The notes beneath the pieces are model-generated. The model did no database searches. It saw nothing but the letters and a program-made list of their open reading frames with translations, and had not been told where the DNA came from. Below, piece after piece: positions 52,004 through 60,623 of a DNA stretch of 64,000 nucleotides. Origin of the DNA: Setoptus koraiensis. Taxonomy: Eukaryota; Animalia; Arthropoda. Position numbers and translations under genes: made by a program. Position 1 is the stretch's first letter, and each line of letters opens with the position of its first letter. Location: positions 2,170,001-2,234,000 of the forward strand of contig CM106586.1 in assembly GCA_048013815.1 (NCBI GenBank), in the 5' to 3' direction.

Positions 52004-55000
52004 GGAAACAAAGGTATTGATGACGATGATGACGATGATGATAACGATGGTACCGCTGATGACGATGATGATGATGACGATGACGCAGCAGATATAGTTG
52101 TGAACAAGAGAAAAGTCAAATCTACAACATCTAATAACAAAGCGAGACAGAAAGGATCAACAGCAAAGAAACAACCAAAGGTGGATGACGATGACGACGA
52201 TGATGACGAAGATGACGACGATGAAGATGAAATTATTGAGGACATATCAGATGCTGAGACTTTGAACAAACTGATTGAGGCAAACGATCATTTGATGGTG
52301 TTCTTTTATGACAAAGAAGACCCAAAAATATTTCAAAAAGCTAGTGATATTCTCAAACAATTAGAAACAATCGATGATGATTGTGATGACTATGATATTG
52401 GCTTTGTTAAAATCGACAATGATCAGGTGGCTAGAGAGTTTGGCCTTATGGATGAATTGCCGGCTTTGGTCTACTTTGAACATCAGTTGCCCTCAATCTA
52501 CGAAGGTAGTTATAAACCTGTTAGCCAGGTATTGGATTGGATACTAAAGCAAAAAAGTGAAGACACTATAGAAGAGGTAACTGATGAGATTTTAGAAAAA
52601 TTATTACTGAAACATCCTTATGTTCTAGTATTCTTCGCGCCAAACTCTTGTACAACAGAATGTGAAATCATTTTACAAGGTCTAGAGAGTATTGACGATG
52701 ACACAGATGATTACGGTATTTTGTTTGTTACGACAGACGATATGGATCTAGCTAGAAAGAGGGCCAAAATAACCAAATTTCCTACTTTGGTTTTATTCAG
52801 AAACAATGGTGACTCTAAAACATATAAAGGAAACTTAAAGAAACCGGATGAAGTTTTAAAATGGGTCACATCAGAAGAGGCGCTAGACATAACAAATGCG
52901 ATTGATCTGGTTAATAGGAAGATGTTTGAAAAGTTATTAAATACATCCAACTATTTAGCAGTTGTTTTCATCAAGGACAAATGTAAGAATTGTGACAAAG
53001 TTTTACAAACATTGGAGAATATTGATCATTTAACCGAGGATAACGATATAGATTTGATTAAGATCAATGACGTTAAATTGGCTCGCGAGTTCAACTTGGT
53101 AGACAATTCGCTGCCTGCATTAGTATTCTTTAAACATCGTTACCCTCATATATATCAAGGTAATCTGTTGGCAAAAGACGCTGATCAACAAGTGTTGAAA
53201 TGGTTGAACGAAGAAAAAAATAATCAAGAGGATATCATCGAGTTAGTATCGGGTAATATGTTGGATATTTTATTGGACAACATGAAACATTTGGTTGTAT
53301 TCTTCTATGATCCGAAATTGTGCGGTCAAGATTCATCGTCCATTGTTAATGCCCAGCAACAGGCTGCAAATCTAAAGTGCAAAAGAGTATTACAAGAACT
53401 GGAAAATATAGACGATGAAACAGATGATAATGGTATACAATTTGTCAAATGCGAAGACACTAAATACGCTAAATCGTTGGGTATTAGTCAGTTGCCAGCA
53501 CTTGTTTATTTCGAAGAATCATCATCGGCTCCAAGTATCTACTTAGGTGATCTGGAGGAGGAGGAGAGAGTCTTGGAATGGTTGCTGAAGCAAAAAAATG
53601 AGGACACTATTGAGAACATTAATAAGGATATACTGAATAAAATGATAACCCAACAACAGAAAGGTACCGACGGCGATGGCGATGAAGACGATGATGATGT
53701 TCAAAAGGAATATGTAGCGTGTTTATTTTACAAATTAAATCACGAAGATAGCGATGATATTGTTGAAACATTGGAACATATCGACGATGATCTGAGTGAA
53801 TATGACATCCATCTTGTCAAAATGGCCGACGATTTGATAGCAAAAAAATATGGTATTCGTCATCCACCGGGGCTGGTATTGTTTCGTCATGGTCTACCTC
53901 TCAAGTACGAGGGCGATCTATTCGATACCGATGAGCTAATAGAGTGGCTGACGAATCCATCAACATTGGAAACTAATGATGCTATAGAGCAGGTTAATGA
54001 AAAAATGTTTGAAAGATTCAGAGTGAACACAAACTATTTGGCTGTTTTGTTTTACAGTGAAACAAATGCTTGCAAGCAATGCAAAAGAGTAATGGAGGAA
54101 CTGGAGAAAATCGACGACGAAGCCAGTGCGGCTGGTATCAGATTCATTAAGGTGGACAATATGGATATCGCGCGCCGTTATGGAATTCACGCTCTTCCAG
54201 CGTTGGTATTCATATCAACGCCATCAGCAACAACATCGACCAATATTGGACAAGATCAGAGTCAGGCTATAATATATGCTGGTGATTTGAAGAAGGGCGA
54301 TAAGATACTAGAATGGCTAATGGAACAAAAGTCGCCCAATCTTCATCAAATCGAAGATTTAAACGGACGCCAATGTAGAGAATTGATCAAATCAAGAGAG
54401 CATGTGGCTATATTCTTTTACAACAATGACAACGACGAAGATTCAACGGATGATTGCGATGATCAATGTGCTATTATATTGGCTGGTCTAGAAAATATTG
54501 AGGGTGATTGTAAAAAGCATTCGATTACTTTGGTTAAAACAAATGATAAATCTATGCTGAAAGAATACGGTATTCAGCGAGATGCAGCATTAGTTTACTT
54601 CGAGCATGGCAATCAGCCTAGCATCTATCAGGGCGATTTGAATGCTGAAGAAGATTGTCTCGATTGGCTGATTCAGCAAAAAACAGAGGACACAATTGAA
54701 GAAGTTAACAGGGGATTATTTGAGCATCTAATTGAATCAAGTCACTATTTGGTTGCATTATTTTACAAGCCACATTGTAAATCTTGTACGGTTGCTTTGG
54801 AGAAACTAGAATCTATTGATGATGATTGTGACCTGTATGGTATCACTATGGTCAAGATACAGGATATACCATTGGCTAAACGATACGGTATTAAGACATT
54901 TCCAGCCTTAGTCTATTTCCGCAATGGGAATCCATTAATATTTGATGGTGATCTTCGTAATGAGCAGCAGGTACTAGAGTGGTTAATTGAGGATGAAAAC

Positions 55001-56008
55001 CGTGAATTAAGTGACGAAATCGAGGATATAAATGGAAAAATGTTGGACAAATTAATAGATTCTTCACCATTTTTGGCAGCCTTATTCTACGATGACGACT
55101 GTCAAGAGTGTCCTAAAGTACTGCGTGAACTGGAGAAAATAGACGATGACACTGATCTGTTTGGCATTGATTTCGTTAAAATTAATGACTTTGCTGCGGC
55201 TAGAAAATACAATGTTCATTCGTTTCCGACACTGGTTTACTTTAGAAAACAATCGCCATCCTATTACGACGGTGATCTTTTAGACGAGGACAGTGTATTG
55301 AGATGGTTGACCAGTAATGACGTGTTTGAGTTAGAAGATGAAATAGAAGAGGTCAATAGGCGCATGTTGGACAAATTAATGGAAACTAATGATTACATCG
55401 CAGTTTACTTTTGTGAGTACCAATTGAACATTTACATATCGATAGAGATATCTGCATCTAGTGCTCCAATTAATTAATTAATTTATTCCTTCATCACACT
55501 AATATGAAAAAACTTGAAATCAGATGACAAAAATTGCCCCACTTGTGATGTCATACTCAAAGAACTCGAGGGTATAGATGATGAAGCAGACAGTCTTGAC
55601 ATTATGTTTGTCAAAATTAAAGATATGAATTATGCCAAAAAATACGGTATAACTCAGGTGCCTAGTTTAGTTTATTTTAGGAAGAAATTTCCATCCATTT
55701 ACAGAGGTAGGTCAACAACAAACAGTTTTAGATTGATTGCGACTAAAATTTACTTATAGATGTTACCTTGATTATCACATTATTACTTACTCACACCAAC
55801 TTACATCACATCTCAATCATATCATCCATCTTATTATATCTTTGTAGGCGATTTAATGAGAGAGGAGAAAGTATTAGAATGGTTGCGCAAGAATAGATAC
55901 CGCAATCCAGAATTAAATTTGTTTATGTACGCATTGTTCAGCATAACAATATCATTTATTTTTTACACAATATTCCTAATGTTTTGTGTCAAAAAGAAAC
56001 AAGAGTAA
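52004..56008 (+). CDS. Acidic membrane protein with at least 10 tandem thioredoxin-like (PDI/calsequestrin-type) domains and a C-terminal TM helix; 5' end in the gap; exons <52004-55412, 55524-55706, 55848-56008
   Basis: Repeat unit IE.V...L..L....YL.V.FY...C..C...L..LE.IDDD.D..GI..VK.....A..YGI...P.LVYF....P..Y.GDL..E..VL.WL; phase-1 GT-AG introns; ends ..ELNLFMYALFSITISFIFYTIFLMFCVKKKQE*. Confidence 0.9.
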
Positions 56009-56519
56009 TAATAACTTATCATCGGCTACAAAATCTAATAATGTCAGCACACACACCGGGCACATCAACAACAGCATCGCCACCACAACATCTTTGATCC
56101 AATCACTAAAACCTAATAGAACCAAGTAAAAGCCAGACCATTTAATCCTGGCCAAATAAAACTGGCCAGTTACCATCTAAGATGGTGTTTATATTCTCAT
56201 GTGTTATTTACAATTAAACATTGGAAATCAATTATTAATGGAAATCATACATTGACCCTACTACAGTAATGTTTGCTGAAATGCGACAGATCCCCTCTCT
56301 GCGCTTGCTCTCTTGTGGTGCGAAAAGAAGTCTTCCAATTTCTAGAAGACTTTACTTTCGAAATCGCACATCTATGATACAACTTTCAAAGGCTATTCCA
56401 CATGATATGAGCCTCTCAGATTTTTTTTCTAATGGCTCTATTCTTGTAGATCTCGAGGTGCCGTTTATACGTTTCTTGTTTCGTTCTAGCAATATTCTGG
56501 TTAAATTCTGGCCGAATTC

Positions 56520-56790
56520 GGTCTGTTACGGGCTAGTGCGGACAGGAGGGCTGTGCCGAAACCCGCAAATCCGCCCGAAATGGGCGGCCGACACGCCCAG
56601 TCTGGGTGACTCAAGCGTCCAGAAAGCGTCCAAATGGGGCGAAAACAGTCAGGAGGCGTGTCTTTGTGCCCGACGGCCGCTAACGGTCTGTCAGGCCTGT
56701 TGACGCCAGTCGATCCCGTGTTAACTAACTCCGCACGCCCACTCCGCGGCTTGACACAATGCACGCGAGACGGACCGCACTGACAGAGTG
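56520..56790 (+). ncRNA. Candidate structured non-coding RNA (family unassigned), or GC-rich promoter of the downstream gene
   Basis: GC-rich island with helices GACACGCC 56590-56597 / GGCGTGTC 56655-56662, CCGCCC/GGGCGG, TGACT/AGTCA, GTGCGGA/TCCGCAC and TCTGTCAG/CTGACAGA. Confidence 0.35.
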
Positions 56791-57148
56791 TGTTTGGCAC
56801 AGTGTTGGTGGATCTGAAGCTTTTGTGCGGCTTGTTCGCCTGTCCACAGCCACACCACTATGGCACACAGAGTATAATTGAGTGGCCCACAATAGTTGTG
56901 TGTTGAAGAACTCGTGCAGACAAAGAAATGCAGCGTCCTGGTTGTTGCAGCCAACCATTTGCTTTATTCATTTTTCTATTCTATCATTATTGTCTATATT
57001 ATTTATATTTTATCAACTAATTCAAATCTATTGAACCACCATTGGCGATCAATCACAACAAATCATCATATTATAGCAACAATTTGTAATCATTGTACTT
57101 GAATCCGGCTGAATATTACACTATTCTTAGATTAATTATTAAGCCATC

Positions 57149-58696
57149 ATGGACCCCTACTCGCCGCCGCCGCCAATCCAATTTATTGAAACCGTAATAG
57201 ACCATTCGGATAATAATATGGTCTTGGATATTCCACCGCCAATTTTGCCCGATATTATAGCGGACTCATCATGTGTTTTATCTTCACCGCCACCACACTC
57301 ACAACAACAACTACAGCAACCCCCGCTGCCGCCTCAGCAGCCACCTTCTACAACCAATTTAGACTCGGCAATGACCTTTATGTCAATTAGTACTCCGCAA
57401 CAACAAGAACCACCTAAATCCATTCAGGAGGTTGTTGACGAATTTATTGGTTTTCTCAGAGATACTGACCCTGATATTGTCATGAAAACGGCACAACTTC
57501 TGCATGATTGGTCTAAGGATATGAATGGTAGAATGACTATTGGCAGTTCTGGGGAGATGATCCATACTCTTACCTCACTTGCACTCAGTAACGATTGTCC
57601 CGATGTAACTATCTATTATGTATCCAGCATTCTCAACAGTCTCTCTTTATGCCCAACCGGTCAAAGGGCCACCATTGAGGCTCCCCACGGTATGGTAAGC
57701 CTAATACACATGCTGCGCTCGGGATATGAATCAATAGTTATACACGCTTTGACAGCAATACACAATCTATTAGCCTACGACATCACCCAAGATGCAGCCT
57801 CTCAATTTAAAAGCCGCAATGGTCTTCCACAAATTGTCGCTCTGCTTAATGACGACAAAAATTACAAATTCTTGGCGGTGGTAACAGATTGCGTACATCG
57901 TCTTGCTCTTGGAGATCCCCAAAGTCAAAAGATCATACTAGATAACAACGGGGCTCAGCTACTTCTGAAGGCTCTAGATAATTATAATCAACGCAAGCAA
58001 CGTTTCGAAATAGCCAATGAAGTAGACTATCTCATCGAAAGATGTTTGGCAACTTTAAAACTTCTCGCTTCAAATATACAAGGAAAGGAGGCCATCATCG
58101 GACATCGCGGAATGGTCATTCTTGGTGAAAGCCTCGGCGTGAGCCGTCAGAGGATGGGCCCCAACGAGTCTAAGAATGATAACATATTAAAGGCCAGTCT
58201 ATTGACGTTGCGAAATTTATCTGATGACGAAAAGGCCATCAATTTTCCAAATTTGCAGCCTCTACTACATGAACTGGTCAATCTGGTACTTTCGTGTAAT
58301 GATTTAACTATCGTAACTTATTCTCTTGGAATACTAAGAAATTTAAGTTGTAACAATCAAGAAAATAAGAGTTTCCTCGTGAATGACGCTGATGCTATCG
58401 GAGCACTTTTACTCAGTATCAGGAGGTGCGATCGAGATCAAGAAATTATAGAGTCTGCCATTTTCACACTACGCCATCTGACACGAACCAGCAGGGAGGC
58501 TCGTTCCAAAGTCGCCAGTCTTGATGGTCTGAATATTATTGGATCCGTTTTGAACCAAGCGAATGAGCTCTCAAAGAAAGCAATCAGGCACTTGCTCCAG
58601 CATTTAAAGCAGGAACGTTTCGACGATCCAACCCACCAGAGGATATACCAGCTGGAGATGGAGATGGAATGTGGTAATAATTGGCACAATAATTGA
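57149..58696 (+). CDS. Divergent, truncated beta-catenin/Armadillo paralog (ARM repeats about 1-9), intronless, 515 aa
   Basis: ALTAIHNLL, GLPQIVALL..NYKFLAVVTDC..LALGDPQSQKIIL..GAQLL, TLKLL, LLTLRNLSD, GILRNLSCNNQENK and ESAIFTLRHLT are colinear with beta-catenin ARM repeats 3-8. Confidence 0.88.
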   Translation: MDPYSPPPPIQFIETVIDHSDNNMVLDIPPPILPDIIADSSCVLSSPPPHSQQQLQQPPLPPQQPPSTTNLDSAMTFMSISTPQQQEPPKSIQEVVDEFIGFLRDTDPDIVMKTAQLLHDWSKDMNGRMTIGSSGEMIHTLTSLALSNDCPDVTIYYVSSILNSLSLCPTGQRATIEAPHGMVSLIHMLRSGYESIVIHALTAIHNLLAYDITQDAASQFKSRNGLPQIVALLNDDKNYKFLAVVTDCVHRLALGDPQSQKIILDNNGAQLLLKALDNYNQRKQRFEIANEVDYLIERCLATLKLLASNIQGKEAIIGHRGMVILGESLGVSRQRMGPNESKNDNILKASLLTLRNLSDDEKAINFPNLQPLLHELVNLVLSCNDLTIVTYSLGILRNLSCNNQENKSFLVNDADAIGALLLSIRRCDRDQEIIESAIFTLRHLTRTSREARSKVASLDGLNIIGSVLNQANELSKKAIRHLLQHLKQERFDDPTHQRIYQLEMEMECGNNWHNN

Positions 58697-58810
58697 AGCA
58701 AATAAAGCGAAATACTGAGCTCTTTGTCGAAAAGATAGCACAGAAAAGTTAAAGCAGTGATCTCACAATCAGTGTTGATTGTGTTTATTATTTTTTTTAT
58801 AGACCTTTGT

Positions 58811-60623
58811 TTACATATCTAGTTTCATTGTTGATCGAACATCATCGATTTTCAAAATCATCTTCACAAGTTGAGTGGCAAGGCTGATTTGTTGTTGTTT
58901 GCTACTCAGAGTTTCTATGACATTAAGTTTCTTCATATCATTTGAGCCGGTAGACATGCAGTCCACTCCTATGTGGGGGTTGTTCTCAGCTACCTGTTGG
59001 GCCTTAATGCTCTGGACTGTCTCAATACCATGCAGACCAGAGTTTTCGGCTAATGACATTGGAATAGATTCTAATGCATCGGCGAACGCTCTAAAGGCAT
59101 ATTGTTCCAAAGATGAAATCTTATCTGCTTCTTTTGTAATTGCTAAACTGCAGGATAATTCGGCGGAGCCACCCCCATAGACAATACGGTTGTCACGGAT
59201 TAAGTTTCTTACAACGCAGAGAGCGTCATTGAGACTTCTCTTAGCTTCGTCAACAACCATCTGGTTTCCGCCTCGAATAAAAACTGTAACTGCTCTGCTA
59301 TTCTTGCAGTCCTCTATAACTAACATGCGATCTCTCGTTGTTCCAAAGTTAAGTTCACGTACGATTCCTGCGTAACCTAGTTTTTCAGGTGTTAGTTCTT
59401 CGAATCTAGGGACGATGCGACCGCCAGTCGCAATTGCAATCAGTTCGATCTCTGGACCTCCAACCCATCGAATAGCGGGCAATTCTTTCTGCAAGAGCAA
59501 ATGGTTTGCTTCATCATCGAAGCCCCATTGACATATAGCTAGATTGGCTCCGACTTTCTTTACCTGGTCGACCATTTCAACGAACTTTTCCTGCTCATAC
59601 TTTCTTAACTTTCTGTAATCTTCAACTGAGGTGACATCCAACTTGTGTTTGGTCTTTGGTTTAGGTGGTTCGAATGGGCATGTGAGTATTGCCATCCTTA
59701 CATTCTCTAATCTTTTCGGCATCTGTGGATGGCTGAAATCTTTGTCCACAATGACACCTTTGACGAGCATTGTATCTTCCATCTGACCTCCGGTTTTCGT
59801 TTCTATTTTGATAAGTTCAAAATCTACATCCCGACGATTCATGTCAGCAACTGACAAAATAGCGTCAACTGCAATTTCGGCGAACTGCCTCAAGCAACGG
59901 CTGACAATCTTAGAGCCGAGTGAGGTCATAGCTGCCTTGATCAGTGGCTCTTTGTTACTGTCATCCACTGGAAAGCTGTCACAAACGCTTTGCAGGTGTT
60001 GAACCGCGTGTTGAGCTGCCATCTCAAATCCATCAGCGATTCTGATTGGGTGAAGTCCTTTGTCGAGTAAGATTTCGGCCTGTTCAAGTAGAGCTCCAGC
60101 AAGAACTTTTTGTGGAGAAAATTATTAATGAATCAGATTCATGGAAATTAATTTTAGGCCATCAAATGAATCAAATAGGCATGCTAGCTAAGTTGGTTGC
60201 GAGACTAACCTACAACTCCGGTGGTTCCATCACCTATTTCATCATCTTGTGATTTTGACAGTTGCACCATCAACTTTGCTATTTCGTGGTCAACATCCAT
60301 ACATTTTAATATGGTGGCGCCATCGTTTGTTATGGTCAAATCTCCATCTGGTGAGACCATGATCTTATCCAAACCTTTGGGGCCCAAAGATGTCTTTAAG
60401 ACTTCAGCTACTCGTTTGGCAGCATATATGTGGGACTAATTTCAATAAGAATTAATGTTAGTGGATTATGGCCAAGAAACTCCCTTAAATAGTCGATTTC
60501 TATTGATGAAAAACCTACTTTTGTGGCATCGATACCAGTGAGTTGTCTTTGTTTTTCCTGGTCCCTGAGAATGAAAAATGGTCGACCATGTTCATCGAAC
60601 GCTAATTGTCCAACAGCAGCCAT
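58811..60623 (-). CDS. CCT5: T-complex protein 1 subunit epsilon; exons 60623-60519, 60435-60210, 60105-58811
   Basis: [48 protein letters not shown]|[33 protein letters not shown]; introns of 83 and 104 nt with matching phases. Confidence 0.98.

What the first reader, a model, noticed from the sequence alone, without database searches (positions are those of the whole stretch)
57149..58696. Stripped-down beta-catenin paralog: binding groove kept; degron, alpha-catenin site and transactivation end lost
Residues of the ligand groove are conserved at the equivalents of human H260/N261 (AIHNL), K292 (YKFL), K312 (LKLL), K345, R386/N387/D390 (LRNLSD), N426, K435 (ENK) and R469/H470 (LRHL); W383 is replaced. 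There is no DSGxxS degron (only LDSAMT), no alpha-catenin-binding helix with Y142, and the protein stops after about repeat 9, lacking repeats 10-12, helix C and the C-terminal activation domain. Such a protein could bind TCF, cadherin or APC while being stable and transcriptionally inert, making it a built-in Wnt antagonist or an adhesion/signalling splitter. Comparable subfunctionalised beta-catenins are established in planarians and C. elegans; I do not know of one described for this lineage. The single-exon structure is compatible with retroposition.
Basis: partly seen in the sequence, partly recalled or inferred. Interest (0 to 1): 0.8.

Follow-up and report, generated by a model that had tools for sequence, protein, structure and literature searches.

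The report
Truncated beta-catenin duplicate in a mite
A gall-mite genome carries, besides its normal armadillo/beta-catenin gene, a fast-evolving but selectively maintained short copy that keeps only the first nine repeats and their partner-binding groove, so it probably binds the Wnt transcription factor TCF without the parts that normally switch genes on.

Summary
The ORF at 57149-58696 (+) is a real 515-aa beta-catenin homologue (E 5e-40 to plakoglobin/beta-catenin; model superposes at 2.2-2.6 A). It has a disordered P/Q-rich N-terminus (1-86), ARM repeats 1-9 (90-487) and a short helical tail.

It lacks the alpha-catenin helix, a DSGxxS degron, repeats 10-12, helix C and the C-terminal domain.

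The genome is probably Setoptus koraiensis, an eriophyoid mite. It also holds a canonical 802-aa armadillo on the other chromosome.

One syntenic 471-aa orthologue shares the truncation. dN/dS is 0.26. Predicted groove residues are 91% identical between orthologues against 54% elsewhere.

The mite's TCF N-terminus docks in the groove in silico (0.75 against 0.00 for controls).

- K312 is not conserved (it is Q); 'LKLL' is K345.
- Retroposition cannot be inferred, because the parent gene is also intronless.
- Degron loss is not specific to this copy. The canonical Arm of this and 14 related mites lacks it too, as another note of this scan (s1-338125) also saw.
- Axin and APC were not found.

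No RNA data could be laid, and function is untested. This is an independent, more extreme analogue of planarian beta-catenin-3/4.

The parts
57149..58696 (+). Complete single-exon CDS (515 codons plus TGA) of the truncated beta-catenin paralogue
   Evidence: ORF list; PDB phmmer E 5e-40; start context gccatcATGg; start MDxYSPPPP conserved in orthologue P0001
57149..57406 (+). Residues 1-86: disordered N-terminal region, 23% P, 12% Q, no basic residues; no degron, no alpha-catenin helix
   Evidence: pLDDT under 50; composition and motif scan; alignment to canonical Arm
57350..57388 (+). Residues 68-80: conserved short motif TTNLDxxMTxMSI, sitting where the alpha-catenin helix lies in canonical proteins; role unknown
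   Evidence: Conserved between the two orthologues; no similarity to the canonical helix
57416..58609 (+). Residues 90-487: armadillo repeats 1-9 with the positively charged ligand groove
   Evidence: pLDDT mostly above 90, 27 helices; Foldseek to beta-catenin/plakoglobin, rmsd 2.2-2.6 A; alignment ends in helix 3 of repeat 9
57761..57766 (+). H205/N206 = human H260/N261
   Evidence: Invariant column in 31-sequence alignment; in predicted TCF interface
57926..57931 (+). Q260-K261: the K312 column is Q (both orthologues), with a basic residue shifted to +1
   Evidence: Alignments
58202..58225 (+). L352 (W383 replaced) and R355/N356/D359 (= R386/N387/D390)
   Evidence: interface list
58367..58369 (+). 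K407 = human K435 (charged button kept)
   Evidence: Invariant column
58472..58477 (+). R442/H443 = human R469/H470
   Evidence: Invariant columns; interface list
58625..58672 (+). Residues 493-508: predicted extra C-terminal helix after repeat 9, non-homologous to repeat 10; possibly caps the exposed end of the superhelix
   Evidence: AlphaFold2 secondary structure, pLDDT about 87-90; tail evolves fast, dN/dS 0.66
58701..58706 (+). AATAAA polyadenylation signal 5 nt after the stop codon
   Evidence: Sequence read

Best explanation
**What it is (shown, about 0.95).** A protein-coding, lineage-restricted duplicate of armadillo/beta-catenin in an eriophyoid mite, probably Setoptus koraiensis. 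It is reduced to a disordered P/Q-rich N-terminus plus ARM repeats 1-9.

**How it most likely works (inferred, about 0.45).** The conserved groove of repeats 3-8 still binds the N-terminal beta-catenin-binding peptide of the mite's single TCF/Pangolin. It may also bind the core of the cadherin tail.

The protein lacks repeats 10-12, helix C and the C-terminal domain. It therefore cannot recruit the C-terminal co-activators of canonical Arm. Without the alpha-catenin helix it cannot link cadherin to actin.

It would then act as a stoichiometric competitor or buffer that tunes how much canonical Arm reaches TCF, like planarian beta-catenin-4.
For: **Homology and fold:**

**A separate canonical Arm exists in the genome:**

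**Only one orthologue is known.** P0001 is 471 aa and 56-58% identical, with the same truncation and the same convergent CCT neighbour. An exhaustive HMMER search of 1.84 billion representatives found only that cluster (E 4e-285); the next hit is 9e-49 and canonical.

**Purifying selection.** dN/dS is 0.26 (bootstrap 95% CI 0.19-0.35) at dS 1.15. The neighbouring CCT gene has dS 1.22 and dN/dS 0.007.

**The groove is more constrained than the rest.** Of the predicted interface residues, 41 of 45 are identical between orthologues, against 190 of 353 elsewhere in the ARM domain (Fisher p 6e-7).

**TCF hot spots are kept.** N426, K435 and H470 are conserved, and K508 in the window copy. The APC hot spot W383 and the Axin hot spot F253 are replaced (hot-spot table in PMC7776579).

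**TCF is present.** The mite TCF (L014:1324-2370, minus strand) keeps an N-terminal DEVKxY motif.

**In-silico docking.** Complex prediction of paralogue 85-500 with TCF 1-60 scored ipSAE 0.75 (three runs: 0.77, 0.74, 0.75). The best of 3 controls scored 0.00. Runs agree in at least 70% of contacts, and partner pLDDT is about 60. That mark was reached by 51 of 78 solved complexes and 2 of 108 mismatched pairs. The interface is the canonical bipartite one on repeats 3-8.

**Functional precedent.** Planarian beta-catenin-3/4 bind TCF, do not activate, and inhibit beta-catenin-1 (PMC5643146).
Against: - No expression evidence. The four RNA runs laid gave zero reads even on the adjacent CCT gene, so the organism is not in them and there was no test.
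- K312 is Q, and K312E abolishes TCF7L2 binding in human beta-catenin (PMC7776579).
- The docking pass may reflect memory of solved beta-catenin/TCF complexes. It shows likeness, not binding.
- Only 47% of interface residues match the canonical consensus, so specificity may have shifted.
- Repeats 10-12 are reported to mediate beta-catenin nuclear transport (my own knowledge, not checked here). A nuclear role is therefore not assured.
- The P/Q-rich acidic N-terminus could be an activation domain.
- Conservation rests on only two sequences.
Confidence: 0.45

Rival explanations
1. Cytoplasmic or junctional groove-binder. It binds the classical cadherin tail (core region on repeats 3-9) without alpha-catenin. 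It would thereby cap, buffer or uncouple cadherin rather than act on transcription.
For: One classical cadherin tail with a catenin-binding motif is present (L036:1480-1872, PF01049 E 2e-26). K435 and the repeat 3-8 groove are conserved. Repeats 10-12, linked to nuclear transport, are missing (own knowledge). [quoted passage not shown]
Against: K312, a salt-bridge partner for cadherin as for TCF, is Q. The cadherin contacts on repeats 10-12 are gone.
Confidence: 0.18
2. Neofunctionalised scaffold. The groove has been retuned to a lineage-specific ligand that is neither TCF nor cadherin.
For: About half of the groove positions differ from the canonical consensus, yet they are fixed in both orthologues (47% against 91%). 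The branch from all other beta-catenins is very long, about 3-4 substitutions per site. There are conserved new N-terminal motifs.
Against: The residues kept are exactly the TCF/LEF hot spots, and the docking to TCF is confident.
Confidence: 0.15
3. Alternative co-activator. It binds TCF and activates through its own P/Q-rich acidic N-terminal region, giving a degron-less, C-terminus-independent Wnt effector.
For: The N-terminus is 23% P and 12% Q, acidic, with no basic residues, and disordered. Parts of it are conserved.
Against: The N-terminus differs by long indels between the two orthologues. No BCL9/Legless gene was detected, and the ARM1 BCL9-contact leucines are changed (L156F, L159F and L178W, read from the alignment). 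There is no precedent.
Confidence: 0.1
4. A decaying or functionless duplicate, or an annotation artefact whose real transcript continues into further exons that restore repeats 10-12.
For: There are no RNA data. It evolves about 35 times faster at non-synonymous sites than the neighbouring CCT gene.
Against: The ORF is intact in two species separated by dS about 1.15. dN/dS is 0.26 and no bootstrap replicate reached 0.43. The groove is 91% conserved. Both orthologues stop at the same place, with an AATAAA signal and a convergent gene 40-115 bp away. No repeat 10-12-like coding sequence exists elsewhere in the genome or window.
Confidence: 0.05

Closest known systems
Planarian Smed-beta-catenin-3 and -4 (Su et al. 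2017, PMC5643146)
   Same: They arose by gene duplication, are C-terminally truncated (last repeats, helix C and transactivation domain lost) and retain the TCF/cadherin groove. Beta-catenin-3 also lacks the alpha-catenin site. They were shown to bind TCF and to inhibit the signalling beta-catenin.
   Different: The origin is independent (flatworm against mite). The planarian proteins keep the GSK3 sites and are controlled by the destruction complex, and they lose only the last two repeats. The mite protein has no degron, loses repeats 10-12, has K312Q and W383L, and has no functional data.
Canonical Armadillo/beta-catenin (same genome, L001:1159-3567)
   Same: It is homologous over ARM repeats 1-9 (about 30% identity), has the same fold, and most groove hot spots are identical.
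   Different: The canonical protein has the alpha-catenin helix, 12 repeats, helix C and a C-terminal tail ending WFDTDL. It evolves slowly, whereas the paralogue sits on a branch of about 3-4 substitutions per site.
Drosophila Neural Armadillo isoform and vertebrate plakoglobin (as discussed in PMC5643146)
   Same: Both are beta-catenin forms with reduced C-terminal transactivation. That paper tested whether they could inhibit beta-catenin/Arm, and proposes C-terminally truncated forms as TCF competitors.
   Different: They are produced by alternative splicing or by an ancient vertebrate duplication. They keep all 12 repeats and the N-terminal regulatory and alpha-catenin sites.
C. elegans beta-catenin paralogues (HMP-2, BAR-1, WRM-1, SYS-1) and insect arm duplicates
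   Same: They show sub- or neofunctionalisation of beta-catenin after lineage-specific duplication. HMP-2 is the next-best PDB sequence match after beta-catenin and plakoglobin (E 9e-20).
   Different: Those paralogues keep a full-length ARM superhelix. None is described as a repeat 1-9 stub. The insect duplicates are cited from my own knowledge, and the primary paper was not retrieved here.

Membership tests
Beta-catenin/armadillo/plakoglobin family (homology) | Significant sequence similarity to beta-catenin ARM repeats, best among ARM proteins | tested here: met
   PDB phmmer: plakoglobin 5e-40, beta-catenins about 1e-38, HMP-2 9e-20, other ARM proteins 1e-6 or weaker. All database hits are armadillo or plakoglobin.
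Beta-catenin/armadillo/plakoglobin family (homology) | Beta-catenin-type ARM superhelix fold | tested here: met
   AlphaFold2 pLDDT 84; the top 50 Foldseek PDB hits are all beta-catenin or plakoglobin, rmsd 2.2-3.0 A.
Canonical (bifunctional) beta-catenin | Twelve ARM repeats plus helix C and a C-terminal transactivation tail | tested here: not met
   Homology ends in repeat 9. A stop codon and AATAAA follow. No repeat 10-12 sequence was found nearby or elsewhere.
Canonical (bifunctional) beta-catenin | N-terminal DSGxxS GSK3/beta-TrCP degron | tested here: not met
   No motif in either orthologue. The canonical Arm of this mite clade lacks it too.
Canonical (bifunctional) beta-catenin | Alpha-catenin-binding helix with Y142 | tested here: not met
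   The region is replaced by an unrelated P/Q-rich sequence, disordered in the model.
Canonical (bifunctional) beta-catenin | Both charged buttons K312 and K435 | tested here: not met
   K435 is kept (K407). K312 is Q260 in both orthologues, with K/R at +1.
C-terminally truncated inhibitory beta-catenin (planarian beta-catenin-3/4 type) | Paralogue arising by duplication alongside a signalling beta-catenin | tested here: met
   There are two loci in the genome, canonical on C1 and short on C2.
C-terminally truncated inhibitory beta-catenin (planarian beta-catenin-3/4 type) | Loss of the C-terminal transactivation domain with the TCF-binding groove retained | tested here: met
   TCF hot spots N426, K435 and H470 are kept, but K312 is not.
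C-terminally truncated inhibitory beta-catenin (planarian beta-catenin-3/4 type) | Physical binding to TCF | tested here: inconclusive
   In silico only: ipSAE 0.75 against a best control of 0.00. That mark was reached by 51 of 78 solved complexes and 2 of 108 mismatched pairs. The pass may come from memory of solved complexes.
C-terminally truncated inhibitory beta-catenin (planarian beta-catenin-3/4 type) | No reporter activation, and inhibition of the canonical beta-catenin | not testable with these tools
   This needs TOPflash or in vivo assays.
C-terminally truncated inhibitory beta-catenin (planarian beta-catenin-3/4 type) | GSK3 sites and control by the destruction complex | tested here: not met
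   No degron. Axin and APC were not detected in the genome.

The most novel reading that the evidence does not exclude
Eriophyoid mites may have dismantled the beta-catenin destruction complex. Their canonical Arm has no degron and Axin and APC are undetectable, yet Wnt ligands, two Dishevelled genes, TCF and cadherin persist. In the Setoptus lineage, Wnt output would then be tuned not by regulated degradation but by a stable, truncated beta-catenin that competes stoichiometrically for TCF. That would be a rewired control logic for a core bilaterian pathway.
Probability: 0.1. Interest if true: 0.8.

Novelty: new variant of a known kind. Interest (0 to 1): 0.45.

Why it matters
C-terminally truncated beta-catenins that compete for TCF have been proposed as a recurrent way to fine-tune Wnt signalling, but the functional case rests mainly on planarians. 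An independently evolved and more radical version in an arthropod would add support to that idea. This version has nine repeats, no degron and no alpha-catenin site, and its groove is under clear selection. It also offers a natural minimal TCF-binding beta-catenin for structure-function work. It sits in a miniaturised mite lineage whose canonical Arm also lacks the phosphodegron and in which Axin and APC were not found. The pair of genes may therefore show how Wnt/beta-catenin signalling is controlled when the destruction machinery is reduced.

Tried and rejected
**Expression.** Read laying with four RNA runs carrying the same species label as DNA holders gave 0 reads on 5.5 kb, including the housekeeping CCT gene. 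The organism is not in those runs, so this was no test.

**Dating the duplication.**
- ML trees put the short pair on a branch of 3-4 substitutions per site. It attaches by long-branch attraction to a rotifer sequence or to fish plakoglobin.
- An AU test does not reject a clade with the eriophyoid canonical Arm (p 0.44).
- Shared-derived-state counting was uninformative: 9 eriophyoid-like, 7 outgroup-like, 25 neither.

**P0239.** It looked like a possible intermediate paralogue. It is a multi-exon, 12-repeat gene from an unrelated assembly (GCA_905250885.1) and was rejected.

**Retroposition hallmarks.** No poly(A) remnant and no flanking direct repeats were found, and the parent is intronless. 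The question is undecidable.

**Pathway-component searches that misled or came up empty.**
- The Pfam CTNNB1_binding model missed the mite TCF. TCF was found through its HMG box instead.
- The weak Axin_b-cat_bind hit is off-frame inside a retrotransposon pol. The weak APC_r hit lies in a UBR5/EDD ligase.
- RGS hits are of R4, R7, GRK and sorting-nexin types. One (L049) had no PDB match.
- ARM hits are importin-alpha-like, an unnamed 915-aa ARM-repeat protein (perhaps p120-catenin) and importin-beta.
- BCL9 was not found, which is a weak negative.

**Other.** Rfam found nothing in 55500-59000.
Full report
**Observation**

The window has an uninterrupted ORF at 57149-58696 on the + strand, 515 codons. 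Pfam sees an Arm repeat (E 1e-8). phmmer against all PDB chains gives plakoglobin 5e-40 and some twenty beta-catenin constructs near 1e-38, aligned over query residues about 90-474. C. elegans HMP-2 follows at 9e-20, and unrelated ARM proteins score 1e-6 or weaker.

An AlphaFold2 model built on a 34-sequence alignment has mean pLDDT 84. Residues 1-86 are disordered. Residues 90-487 form a confident ARM superhelix, and there is one further helix at 493-508. The top 50 Foldseek hits in PDB are all beta-catenin or plakoglobin, at rmsd 2.2-3.0 A over about 400 columns and 30% identity. The object is real and is a beta-catenin homologue.

**Residue check**

I used a 31-sequence alignment of the two short proteins with 29 canonical beta-catenins. 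Human numbering was fixed from the zebrafish full-length chain, whose index is human minus one.

| Human residue | Short paralogue (both orthologues unless noted) |
|---|---|
| H260/N261 | H205/N206, conserved |
| K292, F293 | K240, F241, conserved |
| K345 | K304, conserved; this is the 'LKLL' lysine |
| K354 | K313, conserved |
| R386/N387/D390 | R355/N356/D359, conserved |
| N426 | N398, conserved |
| K435 | K407, conserved |
| R469/H470 | R442/H443, conserved |
| W383 | L |
| F253 | I |
| K312 | Q260, with K or R at +1 |
| K508 | K in the window copy, Q in the orthologue |

One of the two 'charged buttons' is replaced.

No DSGxxS-like motif exists in either orthologue, and the serine of 'LDSAMT' is not conserved. 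The alpha-catenin helix has no counterpart. Homology stops in helix 3 of repeat 9. A non-homologous 28-residue tail follows.

**Organism and genomic context**

The genome handle has two sequences of 24.22 and 24.53 Mb. The canonical Arm of this genome is sister to a clade of about 19 unnamed contig proteins. These include the one named eriophyoid sequence, Aceria tosichella, at 65% identity.

The published Setoptus koraiensis assembly (Phytoptidae, Eriophyoidea) has two chromosomes and a scaffold N50 of 24.53 Mb (PMC11920263). The window is therefore very probably from that mite. This is an inference.

Genes here are largely intronless. The canonical Arm (802 aa, L001:1159-3567, ending WFDTDL), TCF and Dishevelled are single ORFs. 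The single-exon structure of the short gene thus carries no information about retroposition. There is no poly(A) remnant and there are no flanking direct repeats.

**Is the truncation real?**

- An AATAAA lies 5 nt after the TGA.
- A convergent CCT/TCP-1 chaperonin gene ends 115 bp downstream.
- The only orthologue, P0001 (471 aa, 56-58% identity, Logan contig of run SRR33593474), starts with the same MDxYSPPPP and stops at the same place after repeat 9. It has the same convergent CCT gene 40 bp downstream.
- A six-frame search of the genome with the canonical repeat 10-to-C-terminus found only the canonical gene.
- A permissive tblastn of the window found nothing beyond weak cross-repeat noise.

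**Distribution**

An exhaustive HMMER search of 1.84 billion cluster representatives, using a profile of the two short proteins, found only the P0001 cluster (E 4e-285). The next hit, at 9e-49, is a canonical beta-catenin. At least 17 eriophyoid-like canonical Arm clusters are present in the same collections.

The short gene therefore appears restricted to this mite and a close relative. That relative shares 98% amino-acid identity in CCT, at dS about 1.2.

Its branch from all other beta-catenins is 3-4 substitutions per site. The time of duplication cannot be resolved. An AU test does not reject an origin from the eriophyoid Arm (p 0.44), and shared-state counts are uninformative.

**Selection**

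Nei-Gojobori estimates between the two orthologues give dN 0.30, dS 1.15 and dN/dS 0.26. The bootstrap 95% CI is 0.19-0.35, and none of 2000 replicates exceeded 0.43.

| Region | dN/dS |
|---|---|
| ARM domain | 0.23 |
| C-terminal tail | 0.66 |
| Neighbouring CCT exon (dS 1.22) | 0.007 |

The gene is maintained by selection but evolves fast. Constraint is concentrated in the groove. Of the 45 ARM residues in the predicted TCF interface, 41 (91%) are identical between orthologues, against 190 of 353 (54%) elsewhere (Fisher p 6e-7). Only 47% of those interface residues match the canonical consensus. The groove is functional, but it has been partly re-tuned.

**Partners**

- **TCF/Pangolin.** The genome has one gene, found through its HMG box (L014:1324-2370, minus strand, 348 aa). 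It carries a shortened N-terminal motif, NDEVKNYANDP, followed by a helix-like stretch.
- **Cadherin.** There is one classical cadherin tail.
- **Wnt.** There are about six Wnt loci.
- **Dishevelled.** There are two Dishevelled-like genes.

Complex prediction of paralogue 85-500 with TCF 1-60 scored ipSAE 0.75, against a best control of 0.00. That mark was reached by 51 of 78 solved complexes and 2 of 108 mismatched pairs. The runs agree in at least 70% of contacts, and partner pLDDT is about 60.

TCF residues 4-12 lie on repeats 6-8, and the TCF helix (24-45) lies on repeats 3-4. This is the canonical bipartite mode. Such complexes are solved, so the pass shows likeness, not proof of binding.

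The hot-spot table in PMC7776579 fits a TCF-biased groove:
- LEF/TCF hot spots N426, K435 and H470 are kept.
- The APC hot spot W383 and the Axin hot spot F253 are changed.
- However, K312, whose K312E mutant loses TCF7L2, is Q.

**Mechanism**

The best-supported reading is a TCF-binding protein that may also bind cadherin. It lacks the C-terminal co-activator platform and the alpha-catenin link, so it would act as a competitor or buffer for canonical Arm. This is analogous to planarian beta-catenin-3/4, which bind TCF, fail to activate and inhibit beta-catenin-1 (PMC5643146).

The binding, the lack of activation, the localisation and even the expression are inferred, not shown. The rivals are:
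- a cadherin-capping role;
- a re-tuned groove for a new ligand;
- a co-activator that uses the P/Q-rich N-terminus;
- a functionless duplicate, which the selection data make unlikely.

**Comparison and novelty**

By homology it is a member of the beta-catenin family. It fails four defining features of a canonical beta-catenin: 12 repeats with the C-terminal domain, the degron, the alpha-catenin helix and K312.

Relative to planarian beta-catenin-3/4 it is an independent and more extreme variant. It loses three repeats rather than two, and it has no GSK3 sites.

Full-text searches found no paper linking eriophyoid mites with beta-catenin. The Aculops genome paper does not mention Wnt, armadillo, catenin or Axin.

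**Side observation**

The canonical Arm of this genome, and all 14 eriophyoid-like canonical Arm proteins checked, lack a DSGxxS degron. Three other acariform mites have it. In this genome the homologous stretch reads NSYMESSNNLY in place of NSYLGDSGIHS. Another note of this scan made the same point (s1-338125).

Neither Axin nor APC could be found:
- The only two DIX genes are Dishevelled-like.
- None of the RGS genes that could be typed is Axin-type; one hit (L049) had no PDB match.
- The weak beta-catenin-binding-motif and APC-repeat hits are spurious.
- No APC_rep hit or APC-like ARM protein was found.

Caveats apply. Short-motif models are weak in six-frame searches. BUSCO completeness is 89%, and about 3 Mb of the assembly is unanchored.

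If the absence is true, degron loss in the short copy is not a special feature of that copy. The pair of genes would then be interesting as part of a rewired pathway.

Noticed in passing
L001:1159-3567 (G000:C1:6877413-6879821) and proteins P0123-P0142: The canonical Armadillo of this genome, and 14 of 14 eriophyoid-like canonical Arm proteins, have no DSGxxS beta-TrCP/GSK3 degron. In G000 the site reads NSYMESSNNLY. Dinothrombium, Sarcoptes and Oppia Arm keep the degron.
   Followed up: partly
G000 whole genome: No Axin was detected: both DIX genes are Dishevelled-like, and none of the RGS genes that could be typed is Axin-type. No APC was detected: no APC repeats, no APC_rep hit and no APC-like ARM protein. 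About six Wnt loci, TCF and a classical cadherin are present. The destruction complex may be lost in this lineage. The searches are of limited sensitivity, and about 3 Mb of the assembly is unanchored.
   Followed up: partly
L035:1378-2268 (G000:C1, about 16.947 Mb): A second, short (296 aa) Dishevelled-like ORF appears, by reading the sequence, to have DIX and DEP-like parts but no PDZ domain. It sits beside a 472-aa ORF that reads as DIX-PDZ-DEP Dishevelled (L034:379-1797). Only the DIX matches were scored; the other domains were not scanned.
   Followed up: no
L014:1324-2370 (-): The single TCF/Pangolin is only 348 aa. Its N-terminal beta-catenin-binding motif (NDEVKNYANDP) is compressed and diverged, and the Pfam CTNNB1_binding model does not detect it.
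   Followed up: partly
L001, canonical Arm residue equivalent to human D390: The canonical Arm of this genome reads LRNLSVG (D390 replaced by V). The short paralogue and Aceria Arm keep D.
   Followed up: no
window 52100-55759 (+): A very long ORF (1125 aa plus a following 81-aa ORF) is made of about ten tandem thioredoxin-like units. Each ends in an acidic 'IDDD..D' box and a 'PALVYF...Y.GDL' motif. It was not identified.
   Followed up: no
window 56269-56958, both strands: In the 1.4-kb gap upstream of the short beta-catenin there are overlapping ORFs of 77-144 aa on both strands, in a locally GC-richer stretch. Rfam found no match, and the region was not explained.
   Followed up: partly
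L040:5984-9970 (-) (G000:C2, about 7.656 Mb): An intact-looking 1329-aa Ty3/gypsy-type pol ORF (RT, RNase H, integrase). It was met only because a spurious Axin-motif hit lay off-frame inside it.
   Followed up: no
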